Part shown: positions 5,741 through 48,103 of the stretch, piece after piece | Layout: every line of letters begins with the position of its first letter | Numbering within the stretch: position 1 is the stretch's first letter | IMG/VR virus record: IMGVR_UViG_3300021197_001489 | Span: 248,001-312,000 of that record | DNA length: 64,000 nt | Reading direction: 5' to 3' (one strand) | Position numbers and translations under genes: made by a program | The notes under the pieces: generated by a model | Told to the model about the DNA's origin: nothing | The model's database searches: none | Seen by the model: only the letters and a program-made list of their open reading frames with translations

Positions 5741-5973
5741 TGCATAAAATTTGGTTCGACGTATACGATCGAAATCAATGGTACAACATTATTCGTGAAT
5801 GCAAAAAATGGTTTGGCAAAGAATGGCGCGGGCAACGCGGCGTTCGGCGTAAATTGGATATGTTTCATACATTTCATCGTCCTGTTCGCATCTGGTTTTT
5901 AGTACCAGATCCGGCGTTTAAAACCTGGGTAGACTTAAAATATACGCAGTCGGACCAGAAGCAAAATAAGTAA
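5740..5973 (+). CDS. Hypothetical protein
   Basis: 77-aa ORF coupled to the ligase stop (TAATG). Confidence 0.55.
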   Translation: MHKIWFDVYDRNQWYNIIRECKKWFGKEWRGQRGVRRKLDMFHTFHRPVRIWFLVPDPAFKTWVDLKYTQSDQKQNK

Positions 5974-5980
5974 ATACATT

Positions 5981-8227
5981 ATGTTCTTAGCTTTATTAAT
6001 ATTAATTGTAGCACTTAGCCTTTCAGGCATTGCTGCCTATTATAGTATAATTGGTTTGGCTGCAATCTTTGCGGCAGCAGTCATTCCAATTATAATTATG
6101 GGCGGCATACTGGAGATTGCTAAACTAACAGTGACAGTGTGGTTGCATCAACATTGGAACCGTGCAAAGTTTTTAATGAAAGCATACTTGGTGTCTGCTG
6201 TGGCTGTGCTGATGTTTATCACATCAATGGGAATCTTTGGGTTTCTCAGTAAAAGTCATATCGAACAAACTAGTGCAGGTACAGAACAAATTGTACAAGC
6301 AGAAGTAATTGAAAATAAGATTTTAAGAGCGCAAGCAAAGCAACAGCGTTGGACTGATGAAATCGCAAGACTGCAAGCCGGTGAGACTAGTGGCAGAGTT
6401 GATGCTTTAATTGCACGTGAGCGCGAGCGTATCAAGGATGCAAGAGCAAGTCTGGCACCGCAGATTGATGCAGAAAATGCAAAGGTTCCTGGACTTAGAA
6501 CACAAGCAGAAAAAGAAGTAGCGCAGCAGAACAAACGTTTGTCAGATGCACAGAGTCGCAGTGCTGAGGCTATAAAAGTTGCACAAGCAGAACTTGATAG
6601 ACTGGACGCAGATGTAAAAGCATACACCAGACAAGGGCAAGCAAAAACAGGCGCATTTGGCGGCACAACAGACATGGTTGCCAAAGGCAATGAATTACGC
6701 AAACAACAGCGACGCCAACGTGGTAAGCTACAAGGTGATATTGACAAAGCAAAAAGTGCAGAAGTTAGTGTTGCTAGTGCAGTACAACGTGAAATAACAA
6801 AGATTAACAATCGGCTTGCAGATCAAATAAAAGAAGTAGAAGCTCGTATTGCAGATATACGCAAAACTGTAGAGCCTACCATTGCAAGTGCAAATGAAAA
6901 TATTGCAAAGTATACTACACAAGCAGGCAGTTCAAACAAGGACATTGATGTACGCATTGATGAACTAGAGAATCAAATAGATGCATTACAGCCAACTATA
7001 GATACACTGCGTGAAGATAAGTTTGTGTATGAAAAACAATATAGACAGTTTGAAGCTGAAGTAGGACCGATTAAATACATTGCTGAACTTGTGTACGGTG
7101 CCGACCCTGATCAAAACTTGCTAGAAGAAGCAGTACGTTGGGTTATTATTTTAATTGTTGCAGTTTTTGATCCACTAGCAATCATGATGCTACTTGCTGC
7201 TACTGAAACGTTTGGCTGGCGCCGCAAAGACAAGGAGAGTATTGTTGATAACACGAAAACTGAGAGCGTATTGCCGCCTGCGCCGGTTGAGGAAGCACCG
7301 TCAGGCGACCAGCAAACAGAAGAATCACCAGATGCAGCAACTGACCAATCTGGACCAGAGATTGAAGAAACTGGAGAAGCAGATAGCGCAGATAATCAGA
7401 ACTCTGCGAGGGTAAAAGTACATGTCGAGCATATTGTATTACCTGCTGCAGAAGATACACCCTCTGAATCAATTATAAAAGTTCCAGACGAGCCACTCTT
7501 TCCAGAACACGGAACGCCTGAAGCAAAAGCCTTTAGCGATGATATTGTTGCAGCCGCAATGGCCAAACAGTTTGGTACCAAGGCTGACGAAACAAAGAAG
7601 ATTGAAGAAGAAGTTCAGGATCAAATAATCCTTGAATTTATGCAGCCAGCAGAGGAGCTAGACAATGCCAGCGCGGATTCAGAAGTCACTACAGCAGAGC
7701 AAGAAGAGATCACAGACCTGGGAGAACCCGGACAAACAGAACCCACAGTTGAGGAAGAAACAATTACAGATACTGAGCTTTTTGCTTGGAAAGACGAAGA
7801 TGAAGGCGATCCAGAAAAAAGAGCAAAGCGAATTTGGAAACGACTGAATCCTCAAAGCACACTTAAAGAAGAAGAATACAAATTTTCTCACAAAGTAATT
7901 CCTGAAGTTCCGTGGACTCAGTATATGCGAGCAGACGATTCCGACCTAGACCAGTACACCCGTGCTGACTTTGGAACAAGGTTCCCTACACGTCCGATCA
8001 AAGGTGATACGTTTGTCAGGGTTGATTTTTTGCCAAGTAAACTTTACAAATGGAACGGCAAAAAATGGATTGAAATTGACAAAGAAAACACTGATGCATT
8101 TACCTATAACGAAGAATATATAGCACACCTCATTGAGAAACTTGGTTCTGGTGAATATGACCCTGATCTTTTAAATGATGCAGAACGAGCCCAAATCGAA
8201 CAACAACTTAAAAACCAGGAGCTGTAA
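5981..8227 (+). CDS. Membrane-anchored long coiled-coil protein with acidic C-terminal region
   Basis: Three N-terminal hydrophobic helices, ~270-aa coiled coil, another TM segment ([23 protein letters not shown]), E/D-rich linker, KWNGKKW domain. Confidence 0.7.
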
Positions 8228-9435
8228 TGAGTGATGATCTCAGCAATCAATACGAAAATTGCAATTTTTGTAATAAAAGCAAGAACGACGTCAAAAAGCT
8301 CATTGTTGGGGACAATGTAGCTATTTGTAACGAATGTGTGGATTTATGCGGAGAACTGCTTATTCAGCTAACCAACTCTACAATAAATCCTAAAGAAGAC
8401 AACGACATAAACCCTAGCGAACTCAAGGATTTTCTAGACAAATACGTGGTAGGCCAAGAAAATGCAAAAATTACACTTTCAGTGGCCGTAGCAAATCATT
8501 ACAAAAGAATCAACAACACCAATCCAGACATTGAACTTGACAAAGCTAACGTGTTATTGTTAGGACCAACTGGCTGTGGTAAAACACTGTTGGCAAAAAC
8601 TGTAGCACGTTATCTTGATGTGCCATTCACTGTTGCTGATGCGACATCAATCACGGAAGCAGGATATGTTGGTGACGATGTTGAAACATTGATTTCACGA
8701 TTGTTAGGCAGCGCCAATGGTGATGTTGAACGCTGTGAAAAAGGAATTATCTTTCTCGATGAGGTAGATAAAATTGCTCGCAAAAGTGAAAATACTTCAA
8801 TTACTCGTGATGTAAGTGGAGAAGGTGTACAACAAGCATTGCTTAAAATGGTTGAAGGTACTGTGTGTCGTGTACCGGTTGCTGGTGCAAATCGCAAGAA
8901 TCCACAATCAGAAATGATTGAAGTTGATACCAAAAATATATTGTTTATTGCAGGCGGTGCATTTGTCGGTATCAATGATGTTATCAAACGCAGAGCAGAA
9001 GGATCAGGCATTGGATTTGGTGTTGATGTAAAAACAAATAAAGCTGCTGATCTCAAAGATCTTGAACCTGATGATCTAGTCAAGTATGGCATGATTCCTG
9101 AATTTGTAGGACGCTTCCCAACATGGGTAGGCTTAACTGAATTAACAGTAGACCAGTTGATTTTTGTGTTAACTGAGATTCGCAATAGTTTAGTAGCACA
9201 GTACACCTATTTGTTTAAGACAGACGGTGTTGCACTGACGTTTAGTGATGCGGCACTGCAAGAAATTGCAAGTACTGCAAGCAAACGGAAAACTGGTGCA
9301 AGAAGTTTACAAGCAGAGCTTGAGCGTATACTGATGCCGCATATGTTTAGCCTAAAAGAATATGCAAAAAGCAAGATAACTGAAGTCAAAATCACCCCCG
9401 AACTAGTAAAAACTCCACAAAAATTAGCTGCCTAA
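8227..9435 (+). CDS. clpX: ATP-dependent Clp protease ATP-binding subunit ClpX
   Basis: C4 zinc domain (CNFC...CNEC), Walker [13 protein letters not shown] pore loop, [18 protein letters not shown] loop. Confidence 0.97.
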
Positions 9436-9493: not shown

Positions 9494-9706
9494 ATGAGTC
9501 ATATGATGCCAGTACATTTTATAGGTGTAGCACAAGATCAGTTTGTTAGCGCAGTTCGCGTATTTGGCGAGCCTGATTTTGTACACAAATGGCATGATTA
9601 TCGCAGTCATGGAGACATAGACTGGGACAGTGATACAGTTGTTCTAGGCGACAAAGGTCGCACAACCCCTTGCAAATGGAGCTGGCAAGATCATGAACTA
9701 TACTAA
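9494..9706 (+). CDS. Hypothetical protein
   Basis: 70-aa ORF directly behind the early promoter. Confidence 0.55.
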   Translation: MSHMMPVHFIGVAQDQFVSAVRVFGEPDFVHKWHDYRSHGDIDWDSDTVVLGDKGRTTPCKWSWQDHELY

Positions 9707-12020
9707 AATTACACTTGGACTAATGGCATGTACAGCACTGAGTGCTTGTGGCGGCGGCTCAGGTGGCGGTGGGCCAGTAGTTGGTGGCCCACCTAGTAGT
9801 CAATATTATACAACACCTGTAGCGCAAGGCACAGTTGATCCGTTGGCAGGTGCTGCTGAAAATGCAGCATTTGTTGGCGACACATTTATCACTGATTTAG
9901 ATGGTGATGGAGCTACTGACGACATTGTAATGGCAGGCAGACAAACACAGCCTGTATCAGCAGCAAATATTCGTGATAGCAGACTGAGCGTACACTCGTT
10001 TGAGAATGGACAATTGGTTGATAAAACTGCACAGTGGTTTTCAGGAACTGACAATGTAATAATGGGCACAGAGCCTGACGTGCAATTTAGAGATTTCTTT
10101 AAGACAGGCAAACAGGATATGTTTGTATCGCACAGCACTGATATGCAACACTACGGTCCAGCTACATTTTTCCGCAACAATGGCAGCAACTTTACAAAAG
10201 TATCAATCCCTACAGTAGGTATTTGGTCACATGGCAGTGATGTTGGCGATCTCAACAACGACAGCTATGATGACATTATCATGCTGGACTATGGACCAAA
10301 CTCAACTATTGCACTGAACAATACTGTAGATGGATTTACAACATATGTTGATCCACGTGGTCGTAACGGCCATTTTAAAAGTGGAGGATCAGGTGTTGCC
10401 ATTGGTAATTTTATGAATGATGGCGGCAACAATGAAATTATTGTAAGTGACGGTGCGTGTCCATTGCAGTATCTCAATGTTGTTGGATGCGACAATGCAA
10501 ATAGAACCAAAATGTTCAGTGTGGATTTTACTGGCGGTACGTTAACATACACATTTATTAAAGATCTACCATCAGGCGCAAATGCAGCAAACGTCGATCA
10601 CCATGTGAGAGTTGTTAATCATGATTACAACGAAGATGGCAATGCTGATGTGATTGTGTTCTCTCGGACAAGTAGCTCTTGGAGTACAGAACTTAGCGAG
10701 ATACAGTTTTTGCAAAATGACGGTAGCGGTAACTTCACTGACACTACAGCAGATACACTGATTGGATATAAAACTGATACAGCTAGTACTTACAAGCCAA
10801 AATTCTTTGATATCAATGGCGATGGAAAAACTGATATACTGGTAAGTGGTACAGAGTTCGAAGGTAATGGTGGCGGATATAACAGTCATCAGTTTTTGCT
10901 AAAAACAGCCGATAACAAATATATTGCTGCTCATCAAAATATTCTAAAAAACTTTATGAACGATGTTGAAAGCATTGCAACGGGCAACGTCAGTGGCTCA
11001 AGTGTTAACATCTTTCAAGGTGATGATGGTAACCAGTATCTTGTAACATGGGCTAGCACGTCTAGTGTGAGTAGTGACACAAAACTTACACTGTTTATGA
11101 GTCGTCTTGATGATAGTGCAACCACTATCAGTGCTGGAACTGCGGTAACTATGTTGCAAAATGCTTGGCCGTACCTAAGTGATGCACAAGCAACACAGGC
11201 ACTGCTCGATACTAGCACAAGTTTTGCTGGTGGCAATATCATTGATATGAACCGTGCGTATCAGCCAATTGGTAACTTGGCAATGGGAGGCTTGGACTTA
11301 ACTGGCTCAATCACAGGCTTTGATATTGGCAACATTACAGGAATGGCAACTGACAGCCTTGGACGCGGTTACGGTATAGATCTTGCCCAGGCAAACATTG
11401 TGAACACAGGCACTGCTATGTACAACAGTATTGACACAGTGCGCAACGCCTACACTGACGGCGAAGTACACTTTGGTGCAGACAGCGACACACAGCAATG
11501 GACAGTGGGCAACAGCTATTATAAAAATGGTAACGTAGATGTTAGCATGCACATGACACAGTTGAACAGCAACCCTTGGATTGGTTTTAGCGGTGTATGG
11601 GGCGATGTTAAAAACGCCAGCATCATTGACAATGTTGTTACCTACAAGCAGGACAATGTCACACTAAAAGGCAGTGTAATGCATGTGAGTACAAACTTTA
11701 CGCCAGGACTGATCACAGATGTATCCAAGCAAACAGGTGCATGGGCTGAAGCCAGTTACAGTGACGGCGGGTTCCGTGCAGATGTTGGTGTACATCCTGT
11801 TATGTTGTCAGGGTCGGTAACGGCAAACGTTCCAACCAGCATTGACAATACAGGGACAACACACTATACAAACTACAAGTTTGCTTTGCCTAGTAACATT
11901 AATGGTTACATTCGCAGCCAATACAGCACTCCACTTAAACTAGGCAAGTTGAATGTAGCAGCCGCAGTTAGTCAAACAGGGCAGCAAACTACTAGTGTTG
12001 AATATTTCTTTAAATGGTAA
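9693..12020 (+). CDS. Lipoprotein with FG-GAP/VCBS repeats and predicted C-terminal outer-membrane beta-barrel (autotransporter-like)
   Basis: Lipobox LSA-C; repeats DLDGDG, DLNNDS, DYNEDG, DINGDG; alternating beta-strand C-terminus ending YFFKW. Confidence 0.7.
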   Translation: MNYTKITLGLMACTALSACGGGSGGGGPVVGGPPSSQYYTTPVAQGTVDPLAGAAENAAFVGDTFITDLDGDGATDDIVMAGRQTQPVSAANIRDSRLSVHSFENGQLVDKTAQWFSGTDNVIMGTEPDVQFRDFFKTGKQDMFVSHSTDMQHYGPATFFRNNGSNFTKVSIPTVGIWSHGSDVGDLNNDSYDDIIMLDYGPNSTIALNNTVDGFTTYVDPRGRNGHFKSGGSGVAIGNFMNDGGNNEIIVSDGACPLQYLNVVGCDNANRTKMFSVDFTGGTLTYTFIKDLPSGANAANVDHHVRVVNHDYNEDGNADVIVFSRTSSSWSTELSEIQFLQNDGSGNFTDTTADTLIGYKTDTASTYKPKFFDINGDGKTDILVSGTEFEGNGGGYNSHQFLLKTADNKYIAAHQNILKNFMNDVESIATGNVSGSSVNIFQGDDGNQYLVTWASTSSVSSDTKLTLFMSRLDDSATTISAGTAVTMLQNAWPYLSDAQATQALLDTSTSFAGGNIIDMNRAYQPIGNLAMGGLDLTGSITGFDIGNITGMATDSLGRGYGIDLAQANIVNTGTAMYNSIDTVRNAYTDGEVHFGADSDTQQWTVGNSYYKNGNVDVSMHMTQLNSNPWIGFSGVWGDVKNASIIDNVVTYKQDNVTLKGSVMHVSTNFTPGLITDVSKQTGAWAEASYSDGGFRADVGVHPVMLSGSVTANVPTSIDNTGTTHYTNYKFALPSNINGYIRSQYSTPLKLGKLNVAAAVSQTGQQTTSVEYFFKW

Positions 12021-12028
12021 AAAGAAAG

Positions 12029-12059
12029 TTGACAAAGGGGTAGTTTTCCTGTATAAATA
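12029..12059 (+). promoter_or_regulatory. Overlapping sigma70 promoter and T4-type late promoter for hsp20
   Basis: TTGACA (12029)-17 bp-TATAAA; the same bases form TATAAATA (12052-12059). Confidence 0.75.
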
Positions 12060-12061
12060 AT

Positions 12062-12122
12062 ATTGTAAGTTGCTTAACAGGACTTACAATTTAAATCTTG
12101 CTTTTAAAGGAGAAACAAAATG
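12062..12122 (+). promoter_or_regulatory. ROSE-like RNA thermometer in the hsp20 5'UTR
   Basis: 9-bp hairpin ATTGTAAGT/ACTTACAAT, then TCTTGCT-TTTAA-AGGAGA pairing the SD with a bulged G. Confidence 0.7.
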
Positions 12123-12593
12123 ACAAGACTAACCTCACTAGACCTCACACCATTTTATCGTAACGCAGTTGGATTTGATTCACTGTTTGATCGTATGACT
12201 GCCAACATTGATATGGCTGCATCAAGTGGTGGGCAAAACTATCCACCCTATGATATCATTCGTACCGGTGACGAAACCTACAGAATTCAAATTGCTGTTG
12301 CAGGTTTCCAACTAGCTGATATCAAGATCGAACTAGAAAATGGCACATTGAATATTACAGGGCACCAATACAAGCCAGACGTTTCAAAAGAAGACGGCGG
12401 GCAGCTTGCTAACAATGAAGAGTATCTGCACAGAGGAATTTCAAACAGAAACTTCCATCGATCATTTAATTTAGCAGACTACGTCGAAGTTAAAGGTGCG
12501 ACCATTAAGGATGGGATACTCAAAATTGAACTTGAAAGAGTTATTCCTGAGGTAATGAAACCTAAAACCATTGAAATTAAGCACGAATCCTAA
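12120..12593 (+). CDS. ibpA: Small heat shock protein Hsp20 (IbpA-like)
   Basis: GFD.LF, NYPPYDII, AVAGF, YLHRGIS.R.F.RSF.LA, DGILKIEL. Confidence 0.96.
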   Translation: MTRLTSLDLTPFYRNAVGFDSLFDRMTANIDMAASSGGQNYPPYDIIRTGDETYRIQIAVAGFQLADIKIELENGTLNITGHQYKPDVSKEDGGQLANNEEYLHRGISNRNFHRSFNLADYVEVKGATIKDGILKIELERVIPEVMKPKTIEIKHES

Positions 12594-12655
12594 AACTTCA
12601 GATAAGTACAAGTATGCAGAGGGTAATCCTCTGCGTACAGTACAGAGAGAAAACA

Positions 12656-12961
12656 ATGAGCGAAGCAGAAACAAAAACTAAAGTTAGCATCAATGAGCAA
12701 CTCAAAGAGCCTAGTTTGTTTAAACTTATCTACGTCAACGACAACGAAACTGCTATGGAGTTTGTGGTTGAATCATTGGTAGAGATATTTGATTATGCAC
12801 CTACAACCGCTGAAAATTTGACTATTCGTGTACACGAAGAAGGTTCAGCTACAGTAGCAGTGTTGCCATTTGAGATGGCCGAACAAAAAGGTATTGAAGT
12901 TACAGTAAGTGCTAGAGGCGCAGGCTACCCACTTCAGGTCAAACTAGAACCAGAAGTTTAG
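12656..12961 (+). CDS. clpS: ATP-dependent Clp protease adaptor ClpS
   Basis: EP..FKLIYVND..T.MEFVV..L, VHEEG.A.VA, E.AEQK, YPLQVKLEP. Start moved to ATG 12656. Confidence 0.9.
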   Translation: MSEAETKTKVSINEQLKEPSLFKLIYVNDNETAMEFVVESLVEIFDYAPTTAENLTIRVHEEGSATVAVLPFEMAEQKGIEVTVSARGAGYPLQVKLEPEV

Positions 12962-14408: not shown

Positions 14409-14491
14409 TTGTTTTGGGGCTATAGAGATAAGTAAAGCGAGAATAAAAACTGCTCTTTACTTCTCAATTGTTAACAATAAGGAAAAAATTA

Positions 14492-15331
14492 ATGAAGAAA
14501 ATTTTAATGGCTGCCACTGTGGCGGCTCTAATGTCTACCTCTGCACTTGCAGAAATTACTATTGGGGGTGACATGGAATGGTCATTCCAAGACTCAAACG
14601 GTACATCAAGTAGTGCAGTTGATGGCGATATCAACATCAAGCCAAGTATCACTACTGAAGCAGGATTAACAATTGGTGCTGATTTCAATATCAATCAAGA
14701 CGGCAACGATGATGGAGGCAACAGCCTAACTATCTCGGGCGGCTTTGGTAAAGTTGATCTTGGTGACGTTAACTCTGCCACTGATGCAATTGACGACGTA
14801 ACAGATTGGGGCAAGGTGCTTACTAACGGTTCGCCAAGTACAGACCATGCAGCAATTCTTTCACTGTCACCATTTGCCGGTGCAAAGATCCACGTTTCGG
14901 GTGCTGCTGACAGCAACTATGGCACAACAGCAGGCGCAGGTTATGCCTATGCCGGTACATATGATATTGGTTCAATTGCAACAGTCGGTTATGGCAAGTT
15001 GGAAAACAACAACGACTCAAGTGAAACAGTCATGAACGTCAAAGGTTCAATGGGTCCAATTGGCCTTGGCTACGAGAAGCACACTGCTACAACAGCAGCT
15101 AAAGTAGACACTGATACAACATCAATGTCAGCTGCGTTCACAATGGGTGCAACAACAGTTGCACTTGAGTTGATGAATACAGAAAGTGCTGGTACAAAAT
15201 CAAGTGACGAAACTACATATGGTGTTCACCACACAGTTGCACCTGGTTTAGTTGCTTTTGCTGAGTACACTGACGATGATAAAACAGCGTCCGAAGAAAC
15301 AACAGCAATTGGTATTGCAATGACATTCTAA
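14492..15331 (+). CDS. Outer-membrane porin (alphaproteobacterial general-porin-like)
   Basis: Signal peptide MKKILMAATVAALMSTSALA; N-terminus EITIGG; amphipathic beta strands; terminal Phe (GIAMTF). Confidence 0.88.
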   Translation: MKKILMAATVAALMSTSALAEITIGGDMEWSFQDSNGTSSSAVDGDINIKPSITTEAGLTIGADFNINQDGNDDGGNSLTISGGFGKVDLGDVNSATDAIDDVTDWGKVLTNGSPSTDHAAILSLSPFAGAKIHVSGAADSNYGTTAGAGYAYAGTYDIGSIATVGYGKLENNNDSSETVMNVKGSMGPIGLGYEKHTATTAAKVDTDTTSMSAAFTMGATTVALELMNTESAGTKSSDETTYGVHHTVAPGLVAFAEYTDDDKTASEETTAIGIAMTF

Positions 15332-45787: not shown

Positions 45788-47674
45788 ATGAAGAACGTAT
45801 ATCTGGCACAAATGAGCTTGGAATTGCCAGGATCGAACTATTATTATTTTCCATACAGTATTGGAGTGGTTTGGGCATACGCAACTACACAACCTGATAT
45901 AAATGAAAACTATCAATTGTGTAATATTTTTAGCGTAAAAGAGCCAATCGACCGTTTAATGGAAAAAATTGTTGATCCAGGAATACTTGGACTTTCAAGT
46001 TATACATGGAACACCATGTACAACGAGGAACTTGCACGACGTGTCAAAGAAAAGTATCCTGAATGCACAGTGATAATTGGTGGGCCAAATACGCCTAACA
46101 ACAGCGAAGGGTATTTTGAAACCCGCCCTTATGTAGATTTTATAACACATCAAGAAGGCGAGGGGTCATTTACTGGATTACTTCGGCATCTTGTGGGCAA
46201 GCAGGAACTGATGGAAATTGCTGGGATCAGCATCAATAACAACGGCAAAACTGTAATGACCGGGCCAAGTCAACGTGTGGCTCTCGACGATGTACCATCC
46301 CCATATCTCATGGGCCTGTTTGACAACATCAAAACTGAACACCCGAACTTGATATTTAATGGTGTGCTCGAGACCAATAGAGGATGTCCGTTTATGTGTA
46401 CATTCTGTGACTGGGGCGGCACAACATTTTCAAAACTAAAACGTTTTGGCATGCAACGCATAGCTGACGAAATTGACTGGATGGGTCGCAACAAGATTGA
46501 AATGGTTGTAAACAGTGATGCCAACTTTGGTATACTCAAAGAACGCGATGTACTCATTGCAGATATGTTGATTGAGACCAAACAAAAGTACGGCTTTCCT
46601 GTACTGTTTGATACAAACTGGAGCAAGAACGCAACAACACAACTAGTCGACATTGCTGTCAAACTTATGGAAGCGCAGATGATGAGACGCTTTACCATGG
46701 CATTGCAAAGCACTAACCAAGACGTCTTAAAGAATATTAAACGTGTAAATCTCAAAGAAGAAGCAATGACTCGTGTTGCAGAAACTGCCTTTAGCAATGG
46801 CATGAGCGTTAACACCGAATTAATTATTGGCCTGCCTGGTGAAACATGGGAGTCATGGACTTCTGGTTTGTGTCATCTATTAAGTAGGGATATTATTGTT
46901 GAAGCGTATCCTGTGACTATATTGATGAACAGTGAAATGGGCCAGGATGACTATATTGACAAACATGGTATCACATCAACAACACTAAAAAGTTTTTTCT
47001 CTAAGTATGTTGATGAATGGCAAATCATGCTTACTGGAACAAACACATTGCCCGAAGCACAGATGAAAAAATTATGGTTATGGACTTGGCTTACATCAAT
47101 GATGGATGCAAATGGATATACACAGGTTGTATCGCGCTATCTCAACAAACGTCACGGCGTGCCATTTGAAAAGTTCTACGAGCGGCTGCTGGACTATGGA
47201 CTTGAAACACCCGATAGTGCGTTTCATCCTTGGTTGCACAAGTGGCAAGACTATGCTGAACAACTGGAGTTCAACATGTTTCTAGCCGGACTAACTTATT
47301 CACCTGTGATGCAAGACCTTGGACTGCACAAACGACAGCAAACCTATCAGGACATTTACGCTGTAGCACAGGAATTTGCTCCGCAAGATACACTGTTGCA
47401 GGATGTTATGATAGCGCAAGAGAGGCAACAAACCATATTCAATCACGAAGAAACAACCAAAATTACACTGAACGCCAATGTGTTTGAATACTCGTTGGGC
47501 AAAGAAGAATTAGATATTGCGCCAACAAGCTATGTATTCCACAGGGCATATCCGCCAAAAGGCACAAATCCTAGCTGGGTTGAGTGGTATAACAGTACTA
47601 GAAAAAACAAAAAGTGGCAGGCTAGGGTAGAAAAAATCACAAAAAAAGCAACTCTTTTTCACGAAAACGGTTGA
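45788..47674 (+). CDS. B12-binding radical SAM protein
   Basis: N-terminal cobalamin-binding-like domain (GLSSYTWN, IIGGP, EGE); TNRGCPFMCTFC (CxxxCxxC); D.NFG; ELIIGLPGET. TATAAGTA promoter at 45775. Confidence 0.92.
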   Translation: MKNVYLAQMSLELPGSNYYYFPYSIGVVWAYATTQPDINENYQLCNIFSVKEPIDRLMEKIVDPGILGLSSYTWNTMYNEELARRVKEKYPECTVIIGGPNTPNNSEGYFETRPYVDFITHQEGEGSFTGLLRHLVGKQELMEIAGISINNNGKTVMTGPSQRVALDDVPSPYLMGLFDNIKTEHPNLIFNGVLETNRGCPFMCTFCDWGGTTFSKLKRFGMQRIADEIDWMGRNKIEMVVNSDANFGILKERDVLIADMLIETKQKYGFPVLFDTNWSKNATTQLVDIAVKLMEAQMMRRFTMALQSTNQDVLKNIKRVNLKEEAMTRVAETAFSNGMSVNTELIIGLPGETWESWTSGLCHLLSRDIIVEAYPVTILMNSEMGQDDYIDKHGITSTTLKSFFSKYVDEWQIMLTGTNTLPEAQMKKLWLWTWLTSMMDANGYTQVVSRYLNKRHGVPFEKFYERLLDYGLETPDSAFHPWLHKWQDYAEQLEFNMFLAGLTYSPVMQDLGLHKRQQTYQDIYAVAQEFAPQDTLLQDVMIAQERQQTIFNHEETTKITLNANVFEYSLGKEELDIAPTSYVFHRAYPPKGTNPSWVEWYNSTRKNKKWQARVEKITKKATLFHENG

Positions 47675-47722
47675 CATAAGCTATAAACCTGTTATACTGT
47701 ATGTACAGTTAGAAACAAGGAG
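47669..47722 (+). promoter_or_regulatory. Early promoter with conserved leader (copy 3)
   Basis: ggTTGACA-17-TATACT gtatgtacagttagaaacaaggag. Confidence 0.85.
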
Positions 47723-48103
47723 ATGCTTATGCCACAGATTTTTACAGTTTATCAGATCGTTATTGACAAAGACCTTAGTGATCTTATCAACAAAGAAGGT
47801 CACGGTTGTCATGTAAAGAGCCTGGCTCGCATGCAAGCAATGCTGGAAGGCGATGTGCGTCTTGGTGTAATGCATGATTGTTACACAAAGGTAGCAGAAG
47901 TTGTTGCTGATGATTTGGAGCATGTGTTTGAAGTTGGTAACATTGGTCCTGAGGACCGTATTACACGCCTTGAAAAGATGACCAGCATCAGCGTTGGAGA
48001 CATTATTGCAGATGCAGATGGCGTCTGTAGTGTAGTTAACAATGTTGGATTTACTCCACTTGCACCGTCATTCCACAAAATGGTATTGAAGGAGGCAGCA
48101 TAA
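47723..48103 (+). CDS. Early hypothetical protein
   Basis: Follows the leader; SISVGDII motif. Confidence 0.6.
   Translation: MLMPQIFTVYQIVIDKDLSDLINKEGHGCHVKSLARMQAMLEGDVRLGVMHDCYTKVAEVVADDLEHVFEVGNIGPEDRITRLEKMTSISVGDIIADADGVCSVVNNVGFTPLAPSFHKMVLKEAA

What the first reader, a model, noticed from the sequence alone, without database searches (positions are those of the whole stretch)
12029..12122. ROSE-like RNA thermometer and dual early/late promoter on a phage hsp20
Seen: TTGACA-17-TATAAA overlaps exactly with a T4-type late box TATAAATA (12052-12059). The leader has a perfect 9-bp 5' hairpin (12062-12090) and then UCUUGCU-UUUAA-AGGAGA. This pairs U96-A113, C97-G112, U98-A111, U99-G110, G100 bulged, C101-G109, U102-A108. 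Known: ROSE elements upstream of alpha/gamma-proteobacterial sHsp genes use a U(U/C)GCU motif with a bulged G opposite the SD. Inference: the phage heat-gates its chaperone translation throughout infection; this also hints at a proteobacterial host.
Basis: partly seen in the sequence, partly recalled or inferred. Interest (0 to 1): 0.7.

Follow-up and report, generated by a model that had tools for sequence, protein, structure and literature searches.

The report
ROSE-like RNA leader on phage hsp20
The leader of this marine jumbo phage's small heat-shock gene carries the same ribosome-site-masking RNA fold that bacteria use as a thermometer, and over 70 distinct phage hsp20 leaders examined here share it, but whether it senses temperature is untested.

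Summary
The window lies in a 316-kb marine T4-related jumbo phage that has a gp55-type late sigma factor.

Comparative evidence:
- A covariance model (R1) built from 68 homologous phage hsp20 leaders hits only this leader in the phage's own genome (57.9 bits).
- R1 gave 91 matches (90 directly upstream of hsp20) in the 99 sources searched, and it hit the hsp20 leader of all 8 cultured phages tested. These infect cyanobacteria, SAR11, OM43 and Sinorhizobium.
- Hairpin I covaries strongly.
- The CUUGCUU/AAGGAG helix with a bulged G is about 99% pairable across the family.
- R1 also hits the validated Pseudomonas aeruginosa ibpA thermometer. Rfam ROSE_3 is the only Rfam family that hits the phage leaders, and always below its threshold.

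This is a divergent, phage-borne branch of the short Pseudomonas-type ROSE element.

The dual promoter is also conserved. ATAAATA sits 2-5 nt before hairpin I in 54 of 78 leaders, and 24 of those have a TTGACA-like -35 at 17 nt.

Caveats:
- Thermosensing is untested.
- The phage SD hairpin is predicted to be much weaker than validated thermometers.
- In this leader a competing pairing with codons 1-3 is predicted to be more stable.
- The proteobacterial-host inference fails, because phages of cyanobacteria carry the same leader.

The parts
12029..12034 (+). -35 hexamer TTGACA of a sigma-70-type (early) promoter
   Evidence: Read. A hexamer within 1 mismatch of TTGACA lies at 17-nt spacing in 24 of the 54 homologous leaders that carry the late box next to hairpin I. 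The exact TTGACA-N17-TATAAATA is found in 14 other hsp20 loci.
12052..12059 (+). TATAAATA: a T4-type late promoter box that overlaps a -10-like TATAAA (5/6 match, lacking the T at -7)
   Evidence: ATAAATA is enriched 15-fold upstream of ORFs. A gp55-like late sigma factor is present. The box lies 2-5 nt before hairpin I in 54 of 78 unique leaders. The consensus scanner does not list it as a sigma-70 promoter, because the last base of the -10 is A.
12062..12090 (+). Hairpin I. The DNA palindrome is 9+9 nt. The likely RNA stem is 12065-12070 / 12082-12087. The apex is U12071.G12081, bulged G12072, C12073-G12080, U12074-A12079, with loop 12075-12078.
   Evidence: Six of 7 lower-stem pairs show compensatory double changes across 76 distinct leaders, with frequent G.U pairs, so the pairing is at RNA level. 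The same UGCC...GGG apex occurs in Rfam ROSE_3 hairpin I.
12096..12102 (+). Anti-SD UCUUGCU containing the ROSE motif UUGCU, with G12100 bulged
   Evidence: TTGCTT is invariant in the 13-sequence alignment. Of 76 distinct leaders, 72 have U(U/C)GCU and 4 have UUCGUU, which keeps the pairing with the bulge moved by one position. The motif is unique in the genome.
12103..12107 (+). A/U loop of hairpin II. ViennaRNA adds a U12103-A12107 pair, leaving a 3-nt loop.
   Evidence: Loop length and sequence vary among homologues.
12108..12113 (+). Shine-Dalgarno AGGAGA, the 3' strand of hairpin II
   Evidence: The helix is 99.3% pairable on the model-fitted alignment and 98.8% on the MAFFT alignment.
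12120..12593 (+). hsp20 (IbpA-type small heat-shock protein, 157 aa). The start codon is 12120-12122. Bases 12122-12128 (G.CAAGA) can pair with 12096-12101 as a competing structure.
   Evidence: The competing structure is seen. R110 and Y41 align with E. coli IbpA R93 and Y34, the residues needed for binding its own mRNA (PMC10474464).
12616..12634 (+). 7-bp GC-rich hairpin between hsp20 and clpS, preceded by ATAAGTA at 12602-12608. It has no T-run.
   Evidence: Read. It is not listed as a terminator. Context only.
12656..12961 (+). clpS (Clp protease adaptor), the next gene on the same strand
   Evidence: Pfam ClpS 7e-20; phrog_27368.

Best explanation
The 12062-12122 leader is a divergent, phage-borne member of the short two-hairpin ROSE-like class, the Pseudomonas ibpA type (Rfam ROSE_3). 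It probably entered phages together with an ibpA-type sHsp gene and was then kept in many phage lineages.

How it most likely works:
- Transcription starts near 12064-12066. It comes from a gp55-dependent late box (TATAAATA) that also serves as the -10 of a sigma-70 promoter with a consensus -35. The mRNA would therefore be made both early and late (inferred).
- The RNA begins with hairpin I. This stable 5'-terminal stem-loop probably scaffolds the fold and protects the mRNA (inferred).
- Hairpin II pairs CUUGCU(U) with (A)AGGAG around a bulged G and a U.G wobble, which masks the ribosome-binding site.
- Because hairpin II is marginally stable, warming, or anything else that opens it, frees the SD and raises Hsp20 translation (inferred).

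Shown here: the sequence features, their conservation and covariation, their uniqueness in the genome, and the homology to a validated thermometer family.

Inferred: the transcription start, the temperature response and its set-point. The set-point is predicted to be 25-30 C lower than in Pseudomonas or Salmonella.
For: - Covariance model R1 hits only this leader in the 316-kb genome (57.9 bits, E 2e-10; next best 20 bits).
- R1 gave 91 matches in the 99 sources searched. Ninety lie directly before hsp20 and one is an orphan copy in L020. The proteins are 40-67% identical to the window's.
- R1 hits the leader of all 8 cultured phages tested.
- Structure counts on 76 distinct leaders: 95.6% of cells paired against 78.8% in shuffles and 49-61% when partners are slid. 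Hairpin I has double changes in 6 of 7 pairs. Hairpin II is 99.3% paired, with U.G to C-G, C-G to U.G and one C-G to G-C exchange. The structure-blind MAFFT alignment gives the same picture.
- The UUCGUU variant keeps full complementarity with the bulge shifted by one.
- Extended stems covary in L116 (GAA/UUC), L106 (CCUC/GAGG) and L031 (AG/CU).
- R1 hits the P. aeruginosa ibpA leader (31 bits, E 1.5e-5), which itself scores 69 bits on ROSE_3.
- ROSE_3 is the only Rfam family that hits the phage leaders: 10 of the 28 phage loci scanned scored 26.8-36.6 bits.
- The U.G / bulged G / C-G geometry is the one defined and crystallised for ROSE-like elements (PMC11342760). The 61-62-nt two-hairpin ibpA leaders are validated thermometers (PMC3669281).
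- Promoter evidence.
Against: - No experiment has been done.
- The window's own leader gives no ROSE hit at E<=10, and relatives stay below ROSE_3's 43-bit threshold.
- Nearest-neighbour energies are weak. The isolated hairpin II is -3.4 kcal/mol at 20 C and -1.4 at 37 C for the window, and the family medians are the same. The P. aeruginosa and Salmonella values are -7.3/-4.7 and -8.7/-5.4.
- In the full window leader the SD is predicted about 77% unpaired at all temperatures, because UCUUGC pairs better with G.CAAGA in codons 1-3 (-4.9 against -2.6 kcal/mol at 20 C).
- The upper G-C clamp, which was essential in P. putida (PMC3669281), is replaced by U-A pairs.
- Covariation in hairpin II is limited, because the SD side is fixed by its own function.
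- The -10 lacks the conserved T at -7.
- No transcription start could be read from the metatranscriptome contigs.
Confidence: 0.62

Rival explanations
1. The leader is mainly an autoregulatory site. The phage Hsp20, like gammaproteobacterial IbpA, binds its own structured 5' UTR and represses translation until it is titrated away by unfolded or aggregating proteins, for example during capsid assembly. Temperature would be secondary or irrelevant. This can coexist with the thermometer model.
For: - E. coli, Cedecea and Vibrio IbpA repress their own translation by binding the ROSE-type 5' UTR. This needs R93 and an aromatic residue at position 34 (PMC10474464).
- The R93 equivalent (R110 in the window protein) is invariant in all 9 phage Hsp20s aligned. 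Y41 (=Y34) is Y or F in every one.
- The hairpin I apex (UGCC...GGG with a bulged G) is conserved in sequence, beyond what a mere stem requires.
- The weak predicted hairpin II would benefit from a protein clamp.
Against: - The K98 equivalent, where alanine abolished repression in E. coli, is S, T, G, A or V in 8 of the 9 phage proteins aligned and R in one (L031).
- The R93-type arginine is common among sHsps, so it is weak evidence.
- No binding data exist.
- The RNA determinants of IbpA binding are not defined.
Confidence: 0.2
2. In this lineage the closed state is not the ROSE helix. It is the pairing of UCUUGC (12096-12101) with G.CAAGA (12122-12128), which occludes the start codon and first codons and leaves the SD in a loop. 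The ROSE resemblance would be ancestral baggage.
For: - This is the ViennaRNA minimum-energy and centroid structure.
- It is about 2 kcal/mol more stable than the ROSE helix at every temperature.
- Close relatives that begin AUGACAAGA share UCUUG.
Against: - The partner is lost in many family members, for example those beginning AUGACUAAA or AUGGUAAAU, while anti-SD/SD complementarity is universal.
- Most other members instead have GUCA(U) upstream pairing with (A)UGAC. That stem is compatible with the ROSE helix and extends it.
- The whole leader's fold is not unusually stable (z = -1.19).
Confidence: 0.12
3. There is no translational control. The 5' hairpin only stabilises the mRNA, or is a DNA operator. 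CUUGCUU is conserved for another reason, such as a MotA-box-like promoter element, or it is there by chance.
For: - The T4 MotA box is TGCTTtA (quoted in PMC9004378), which resembles TTGCTTTT / TTGCTTAA.
- 5'-terminal hairpins are known mRNA stabilisers (general knowledge).
Against: - MotA-box-like words are not enriched upstream of genes (9 found, 9.1 expected) and none has a -10 at the right distance.
- A start 30 nt downstream of such a box would fall inside the CDS.
- Stem sequences differ between phages while staying complementary, with many G.U pairs. That fits RNA pairing, not a protein-bound DNA palindrome.
- The motif is unique to hsp20 in the genome and is reciprocally similar to ROSE_3.
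Confidence: 0.04

Closest known systems
Short ROSE-like RNA thermometers of Pseudomonas ibpA (Rfam ROSE_3, RF02523; Krajewski et al. 2013, PMC3669281)
   Same: - A 5' UTR of about 55-62 nt in front of an ibpA-type sHsp gene.
- Two hairpins.
- A hairpin I apex of UGCC-loop-GGG with a bulged G.
- Hairpin II pairs (A)CU(U/C)GCU with AGGAG around a bulged G.
- The start codon is outside the helix.
- The covariance-model hits are reciprocal.
   Different: - The element is encoded by phages.
- A phage late box, with or without a sigma-70 -35, replaces the sigma-32 promoter.
- The upper G-C clamp is replaced by U-A pairs.
- Predicted stability is about half.
- All phage leaders score below ROSE_3's threshold, and the window's own leader gives no hit.
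- Many members add a GUCA/UGAC lower stem that covers the start codon.
Classical ROSE (Bradyrhizobium hspA ROSE1) and enterobacterial ibpA ROSE_2 (RF01832)
   Same: The U(U/C)GCU anti-SD, the bulged G and the sHsp context are shared (PMC3669281, PMC11342760). The Salmonella ibpA control scored 94.9 bits on ROSE_2.
   Different: These have three to four hairpins and a longer, more stable thermosensing stem. No ROSE or ROSE_2 hit was found in the window or in any phage leader. R1 does not hit the Salmonella ibpA leader.
ROSE-like thermometers upstream of ABC transporter genes (PMC11342760, PMC12857270)
   Same: The same UUGCU / bulged G / U.G wobble core, confirmed by a crystal structure and by deletion of the bulged G.
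   Different: The downstream genes differ, the elements are bacterial, and there is no conserved hairpin I of the ibpA type.
Phage lambda cIII mRNA thermosensor (from my own knowledge, not checked here)
   Same: It is a phage-encoded mRNA whose translation depends on a temperature-sensitive RNA structure.
   Different: It switches between two alternative structures and works in the opposite direction (less translation at high temperature). It has no ROSE motif and is unrelated in sequence.
T4-type late promoters (TATAAATA read by gp55) overlapping sigma-70 promoters
   Same: The box sequence is the same, the phage has a gp55 homologue, and the box is enriched 25-35 nt before start codons.
   Different: Here the consensus is NATAAATA(C), as in marine T4-like phages. 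The hsp20 box lies 67 nt before the ATG because the leader is inserted between them. It doubles as a -10 for a consensus -35.
IbpA self-repression through its own 5' UTR (PMC10474464)
   Same: The sHsp is of the same IbpA type, the leader is a ROSE-type structure, and the R93 and Y34 equivalents are conserved.
   Different: The K98 equivalent is not conserved, and binding has not been tested for any phage protein.

Membership tests
ROSE-like RNA thermometer (literature definition) | Lies in the 5' UTR of a small heat-shock (ibpA/hsp20) gene | tested here: met
   Bases 12062-12119 directly precede hsp20.
ROSE-like RNA thermometer (literature definition) | A U(U/C)GCU motif pairs imperfectly with the SD in the 3'-proximal hairpin | tested here: met
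   UUGCU at 12098-12102 pairs with AGGA at 12108-12111. RNAalifold predicts the helix. It is 98.8-99.3% pairable across 68-76 distinct leaders.
ROSE-like RNA thermometer (literature definition) | A bulged G opposite the SD, next to a U.G or C-G pair | tested here: met
   G12100 lies between U12099.G12110 and C12101-G12109. The geometry matches PMC11342760. It is conserved in 72 of 76 leaders and shifted by one position in 4. This is a predicted structure only.
ROSE-like RNA thermometer (literature definition) | One or more additional 5' hairpins | tested here: met
   Hairpin I shows compensatory changes in 6 of 7 pairs.
ROSE-like RNA thermometer (literature definition) | Heat-induced melting of the SD hairpin and heat-induced translation | not testable with these tools
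   Only nearest-neighbour predictions are available. The isolated hairpin II goes from -4.9 kcal/mol at 10 C to -1.4 at 37 C. The helix evaluated within the leader reaches about 0 near 40 C. In the full leader the predicted SD accessibility hardly changes with temperature. The validated P. aeruginosa control is also poorly described by this model.
Pseudomonas-type short ROSE (PMC3669281) | G-C pairs flank the ROSE/SD core on both sides | tested here: not met
   The lower clamp C12097-G12112 is present. The upper clamp is replaced by U-A pairs in the window and in most phage leaders.
Rfam ROSE_3 (RF02523) | Covariance-model score at or above the gathering threshold of 43 bits | tested here: not met
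   The window gives no hit at E<=10. Ten of the 28 phage loci scanned scored 26.8-36.6 bits. The control, P. aeruginosa ibpA, scores 69.2 bits.
Rfam ROSE_3 (RF02523) | Reciprocal similarity between the phage-leader model and a bona fide member | tested here: met
   R1 hits the P. aeruginosa ibpA leader at 31.1 bits, E 1.5e-5, aligned end to end. It also hits 3 of 80 bacterial ibpA loci: a Pseudomonadales MAG, Gynuella and Hahella.
Rfam ROSE (RF00435) and ROSE_2 (RF01832) | Covariance-model match | tested here: not met
   There are no hits in the window or in the phage leaders.
Rfam freshwater-2 (RF02980) | Score at or above 49.9 bits | tested here: not met
   The score is 27.3 bits, E 0.028. 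The alignment shows the clearest agreement over the generic AAAGGAGAAA..AUG ribosome-binding site, and several predicted pairs are broken.
T4-type late promoter | A TATAAATA box, a gp55-type sigma factor in the genome, and enrichment of the box before genes | tested here: met
   The box is at 12052-12059. The sigma factor matches phrog_12791 at 3.6e-74 and T4 gp55 at 2e-6. ATAAATA is enriched 15-fold. No gp45 homologue was found by sequence. The transcription start was not mapped.
Sigma-70 (early) promoter | TTGACA, 17 nt, TATAAT | tested here: inconclusive
   Eleven of 12 positions match, but the -10 ends in A instead of the conserved T, so the scanner rejects it. Conservation of the -35 at 17 nt in 24 of 54 homologues argues that it is used.
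T4 MotA-dependent middle promoter | A MotA box TGCTTtA 11-13 bp upstream of a -10, enriched before genes | tested here: not met
   Nine were found against 9.1 expected in upstream regions, and none has a -10 at the right distance.
IbpA-type self-repression | R93, aromatic residue 34 and basic residues 97/98 in the protein, with binding to its own 5' UTR | tested here: inconclusive
   The R93 equivalent is invariant and the Y34 equivalent is Y or F. The R97 equivalent is mostly R or K. The K98 equivalent is not basic in 8 of the 9 phage proteins aligned. Binding cannot be tested here.

The most novel reading that the evidence does not exclude
The hsp20 leader defines a large virus-borne clade of ROSE-type RNA sensors, kept in the hsp20 core gene of marine T4-like phages (cyanophages, pelagiphages, methylophages) and related jumbo phages. 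Its set-point is tuned to cool ocean temperatures. It may also be coupled to Hsp20 binding its own mRNA, so that chaperone output follows both temperature and the load of unfolded virion proteins. That would be a protein-independent environmental sensor built into phage infection programmes on a global scale.
Probability: 0.3. Interest if true: 0.75.

Novelty: new member of a known kind. Interest (0 to 1): 0.6.

Why it matters
hsp20 is a core gene of marine T4-like cyanophages (PMC3037559), and its role and regulation are unclear. A conserved ROSE-type leader gives the first concrete, testable handle on when phages make this chaperone.

If it works, ocean temperature could directly tune a phage gene through RNA structure, with no protein sensor involved. 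A 2024 review still treated this idea as speculation (PMC10884466). My literature searches found no report of ROSE-like elements in phages.

The finding also shows a regulatory RNA carried into viruses with its gene while the promoter was exchanged: sigma-32 in bacteria, late box with or without sigma-70 in phages. It adds a naturally weaker, A/U-rich set of ROSE variants that may be useful for studying how thermometer set-points are tuned. Rfam's ROSE_3 model missed every one of the 28 phage loci scanned here, so current annotation may overlook them.

Tried and rejected
- **Rfam at gathering thresholds on the whole window:** nothing found.
- **Rfam at E<=10 on 11900-12300:** no ROSE family. 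There was only a sub-threshold freshwater-2 match, whose clearest agreement is over the generic ribosome-binding site. I rejected it as a membership. A paper search for 'freshwater-2' found nothing.
- **Whole-leader fold:** not unusually stable (z = -1.19). Single-sequence thermodynamics would therefore not have flagged the element.
- **Temperature scans of SD accessibility:** these gave flat curves and also misdescribed the validated P. aeruginosa control. I treat them as uninformative about function.
- **TATAAATA as an 8-mer:** not enriched in the window. The enriched signal is the 7-mer ATAAATA.
- **T4 gp45 sliding clamp:** no homologue found by sequence. A divergent clamp is not excluded.
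- **MotA-box reading of TGCTT:** rejected.
- **DNA-operator (CIRCE-like) reading of the 9-bp palindrome:** rejected, because the stems covary and include G.U pairs.
- **Terminator reading:** no T-run, and not listed by the scanner.
- **Metatranscriptome contigs:** they cover hsp20 from about 12050 to 12353 in RNA libraries, partly from relatives. One contig runs on into a relative's promoter. They give no transcription start and do not prove transcription.
- **Bacterial hsp20 homologues:** the search with the protein alignment failed, so I repeated it with the single protein. Only 3 of 80 bacterial loci carry an R1-like leader, so no donor or host could be named.
- **Close DNA relatives among isolated phages:** none, apart from a 118-bp stretch within hsp20 in the Melnitz phages.
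Full report
**1.

Reading 11700-12800 confirms every coordinate:
- TTGACA at 12029-12034, a 17-nt spacer, TATAAA at 12052-12057 and TATAAATA at 12052-12059.
- A perfect 9-nt inverted repeat at 12062-12070 / 12082-12090.
- UCUUGCU at 12096-12102, UUUAA, AGGAGA at 12108-12113 and the ATG at 12120.

The ORF at 12120-12593 is an Hsp20/alpha-crystallin protein (Pfam 1.2e-16; phrog_432). It is followed by clpS at 12656-12961.

**2. Genomic setting**

The window is bases 248,001-312,000 of a single 316,012-bp virus record, estimated 91% complete. DNA that matches it is held by seawater metagenomes.

The phage has a T4-type DNA polymerase, gp46/gp47-like nucleases, a large terminase and a Clp-type ATPase. 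It also has a gp55-type late sigma factor (T4 gp55 at E 2e-6; phrog_12791 at 3.6e-74).

Two promoter classes show up in the sequence:
- Consensus TTGACA-N16-18-TAnnnT sites occur 38 times on the + strand and 4 times on the - strand, mostly just before ORFs.
- The 7-mer ATAAATA has 32 of its 47 copies within 80 nt upstream of an ORF on the sense strand, a 15-fold enrichment. It usually lies 25-35 nt before the ATG, often in front of large, probably structural, genes.

The full 8-mer TATAAATA is not enriched. The late consensus here is NATAAATA(C), as in marine T4-like phages.

At hsp20 the box is 67 nt from the ATG. The extra length is the structured leader.

**3. Comparative evidence**

Viral contigs encoding Hsp20 relatives (40-67% identity) have strikingly similar leaders. 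From 5' to 3' they carry:
- a late box;
- 2-5 nt further on, a hairpin whose stem differs from phage to phage but whose apex is UGCC-loop-GGG;
- a short linker;
- (A/U)CUUGCUU;
- an A/U loop;
- AAGGAGA;
- about 7 nt;
- AUGAC.

I built covariance model R1 from 68 leaders.
- In the phage's own genome R1 finds only the hsp20 leader (57.9 bits, E 2e-10). The next match scores 20 bits.
- Across the 99 sources searched it gives 91 matches, 90 of them directly before hsp20.

On the 76 distinct sequences:
- 95.6% of cells form standard pairs, against 78.8% in shuffles and 49-61% with slid partners.
- Hairpin I has double changes in 6 of 7 pairs, with up to six pair types.
- The anti-SD/SD helix is 99.3% paired.

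The structure-blind MAFFT alignment agrees: 88.7% overall and 98.8% for hairpin II.

Variants are telling. Four leaders have UUCGUU instead of UUGCUU, which keeps every pair and moves the bulged G by one position. Eleven have UCGCU, the other allowed ROSE form. L116, L106 and L107 lengthen the helix with matching changes on both strands.

In the genome, U(U/C)GCU just upstream of an SD occurs only at hsp20, among 145 SD-bearing ORFs.

**4. Relation to known ROSE elements**

The literature defines ROSE-like thermometers by a U(U/C)GCU motif that pairs imperfectly with the SD around a bulged G (PMC3669281, PMC11342760). The crystal structure shows U.G, bulged G, C-G, which is the arrangement at 12099-12101.

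Pseudomonas ibpA has the shortest known form: a 61-62-nt leader with two hairpins and the AUG unpaired. It has been validated by reporters, toeprinting and probing (PMC3669281).

I used records in the phage collection that are really bacterial as controls. Salmonella ibpA scores 94.9 bits on ROSE_2, and P. aeruginosa ibpA scores 69.2 bits on ROSE_3.
- R1 hits the P. aeruginosa leader end to end (31.1 bits, E 1.5e-5).
- ROSE_3 is the only Rfam family that hits phage leaders. Melnitz scores 34.1 and C48C1 scores 26.8. Eight of 20 metagenomic leaders score 27.7-36.6. All are under the 43-bit threshold.
- ROSE_3's hairpin I consensus (AUGCCGAAGUCGGGU) is nearly the phage apex.
- The window's own, more diverged apex (UUGCUUAACAGGA) explains why it gave no ROSE hit.

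R1 also matches the hsp20 leader of every cultured phage tested:

| Phage | R1 score (bits) |
|---|---|
| Melnitz | 59 |
| C48C1 | 33.6 |
| Sinorhizobium phage Phosso | 33.3 |
| Syn33 | 32.2 |
| S-CAM8 | 30.9 |
| HTVC115P | 30.9 |
| HTVC008M | 28.8 |
| P-SSM3 | 26.2 |

Only 3 of 80 bacterial ibpA loci match R1: a Pseudomonadales MAG, Gynuella and Hahella.

I therefore file the element as a divergent phage branch of the Pseudomonas-type short ROSE. It is not a member by Rfam's threshold.

**5. Promoter**

Among 78 unique upstream regions:
- 54 have ATAAATA 2-5 nt before hairpin I;
- 24 of these have a hexamer within 1 mismatch of TTGACA at 17-nt spacing (14 are perfect), where about 1.4% would be expected by chance;
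- 13 have TATAATAAATA, in which a consensus -10 overlaps the late box.

L023, L024, L027 and L032 place the late box inside the spacer of a TTGACA-17-TATAAT promoter. The bacterial sigma-32 promoter seen before P. aeruginosa ibpA is absent.

The combination of an early-type and a late-type signal is thus a conserved theme, and the late box is its most constant part.

Caveats:
- The window's -10 (TATAAA) lacks the conserved T at -7.
- No 5' ends are available. RNA-library contigs cover hsp20 but are uninformative about the start.

A start 5-7 nt after the box puts the 5' end at about 12064-12066. Hairpin I would then be 5'-terminal with about 6 of its 9 lower pairs. This fits the outermost model pair being unpaired in 30 of 76 leaders.

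**6. Mechanism and its weak points**

The shown facts fit an SD-masking hairpin that opens with temperature. The energetics are marginal.

Predicted energy of the isolated hairpin II, in kcal/mol:

| Leader | 10 C | 20 C | 30 C | 37 C |
|---|---|---|---|---|
| Window (the family medians are almost the same) | -4.9 | -3.4 | -2.2 | -1.4 |
| P. aeruginosa ibpA | -9.1 | -7.3 | -5.6 | -4.7 |

If the phage element is a thermometer, its set-point is roughly 25-30 C lower. That is plausible for ocean hosts but unproven.

The upper G-C clamp, essential in P. putida, is missing.

In the window's leader ViennaRNA prefers UCUUGC pairing with G.CAAGA in codons 1-3. This would hide the start codon rather than the SD. 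That partner is not conserved across the family. Most members instead have GUCA(U) pairing with (A)UGAC, which extends the ROSE helix over the start codon.

A second, compatible mechanism is autoregulation. IbpA represses its own translation by binding its ROSE-type leader through R93 and Y34 (PMC10474464). Both residues are conserved in the phage proteins (R110 and Y41 in the window). The K98 equivalent is not.

**7. Host inference and novelty**

The leader occurs in phages of cyanobacteria, alphaproteobacteria and gammaproteobacteria, so it is not evidence for a proteobacterial host.

I found no report of ROSE-like elements in phage genomes. A 2024 review only speculates about phage RNA thermometers (PMC10884466).

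The kind of element is known. The phage clade, its breadth, its promoter swap and its weak A/U-rich sensor stem are new.

Noticed in passing
window 47671-47730 (genome 295,671); also genome 59,031 and 71,237; L027 and L032 just upstream of hairpin I: Several consensus early promoters are followed at about +1 by a conserved GTACAGTTAGAAA(A/C)AGGAG leader. ACAGTTAG is about 9-fold enriched upstream of ORFs. At genome 59,031 it forms an 11-nt inverted repeat around the -10. In L027 and L032 it forms an extra RNA hairpin in the hsp20 leader. It could be an operator or a shared early-leader element.
   Followed up: partly
L020 1003-1070 (IMG/VR contig 3300027861_000181): A close relative has an orphan second copy of the hsp20 leader (49.3 bits). 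It sits where hsp20 starts in the window's phage. About 2 kb follows, including a pentapeptide-repeat protein, and then hsp20 with a different hairpin I. This looks like an insertion that duplicated or replaced the leader.
   Followed up: partly
genome 64,834-64,864 (L004 4834-4864), outside the window: This is the only other TTGACA-N17-TATAAATA in the genome. It lies 86 nt before an 82-aa ORF and may be a second dual early/late promoter.
   Followed up: no
genome about 5,950-9,118 (L001) and window 12120-12961: The phage carries a set of proteostasis genes: a DnaJ-like N-terminus after a consensus promoter at genome 5,950, a 766-aa Clp-type ATPase (phrog_4871, 2e-231), and hsp20 with clpS next to it. 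None of the others has the R1 leader.
   Followed up: partly
window 12602-12634: Between hsp20 and clpS there is ATAAGTA, a word 6.6-fold enriched upstream of ORFs. It is followed by a 7-bp GC-rich hairpin (12616-12622 / 12628-12634) with no T-run. It could be a late-type promoter plus a 5' hairpin for clpS, or a processing or stability element.
   Followed up: no
window 12071-12081, and the same position in all homologues: The apex of hairpin I repeats the ROSE geometry. A pyrimidine pairs with G, then comes a bulged G, then C-G (UUGCU...AGGA in the window, YGCC...GGG elsewhere). The leader thus holds two copies of the bulged-G motif. ROSE_3 shares this. Its role is unknown.
   Followed up: partly
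window 12049-12122: There is a sub-threshold match to Rfam freshwater-2 (27.3 bits against 49.9). The clearest agreement is over the AAAGGAGAAA..AUG ribosome-binding site. Whether freshwater-2 is itself a phage gene leader was not checked.
   Followed up: no
genome 53,236 (L003): A consensus early promoter is followed directly by a tRNA-like sequence, so the phage probably encodes tRNAs. No tRNA scan was run.
   Followed up: no
window 14468-15331: This is a 287-aa ORF with a signal-peptide-like N-terminus and a Gly/Thr/Ala-rich composition reminiscent of an outer-membrane porin. It was not searched.
   Followed up: no
window 9693-12020: The gene upstream of hsp20 encodes a 775-aa FG-GAP repeat protein with a lipoprotein-like N-terminus (Pfam FG-GAP_3, 3.6e-15). 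Its C-terminal end (...KW) is conserved in the relatives L017-L020, so the synteny with hsp20 is old.
   Followed up: partly
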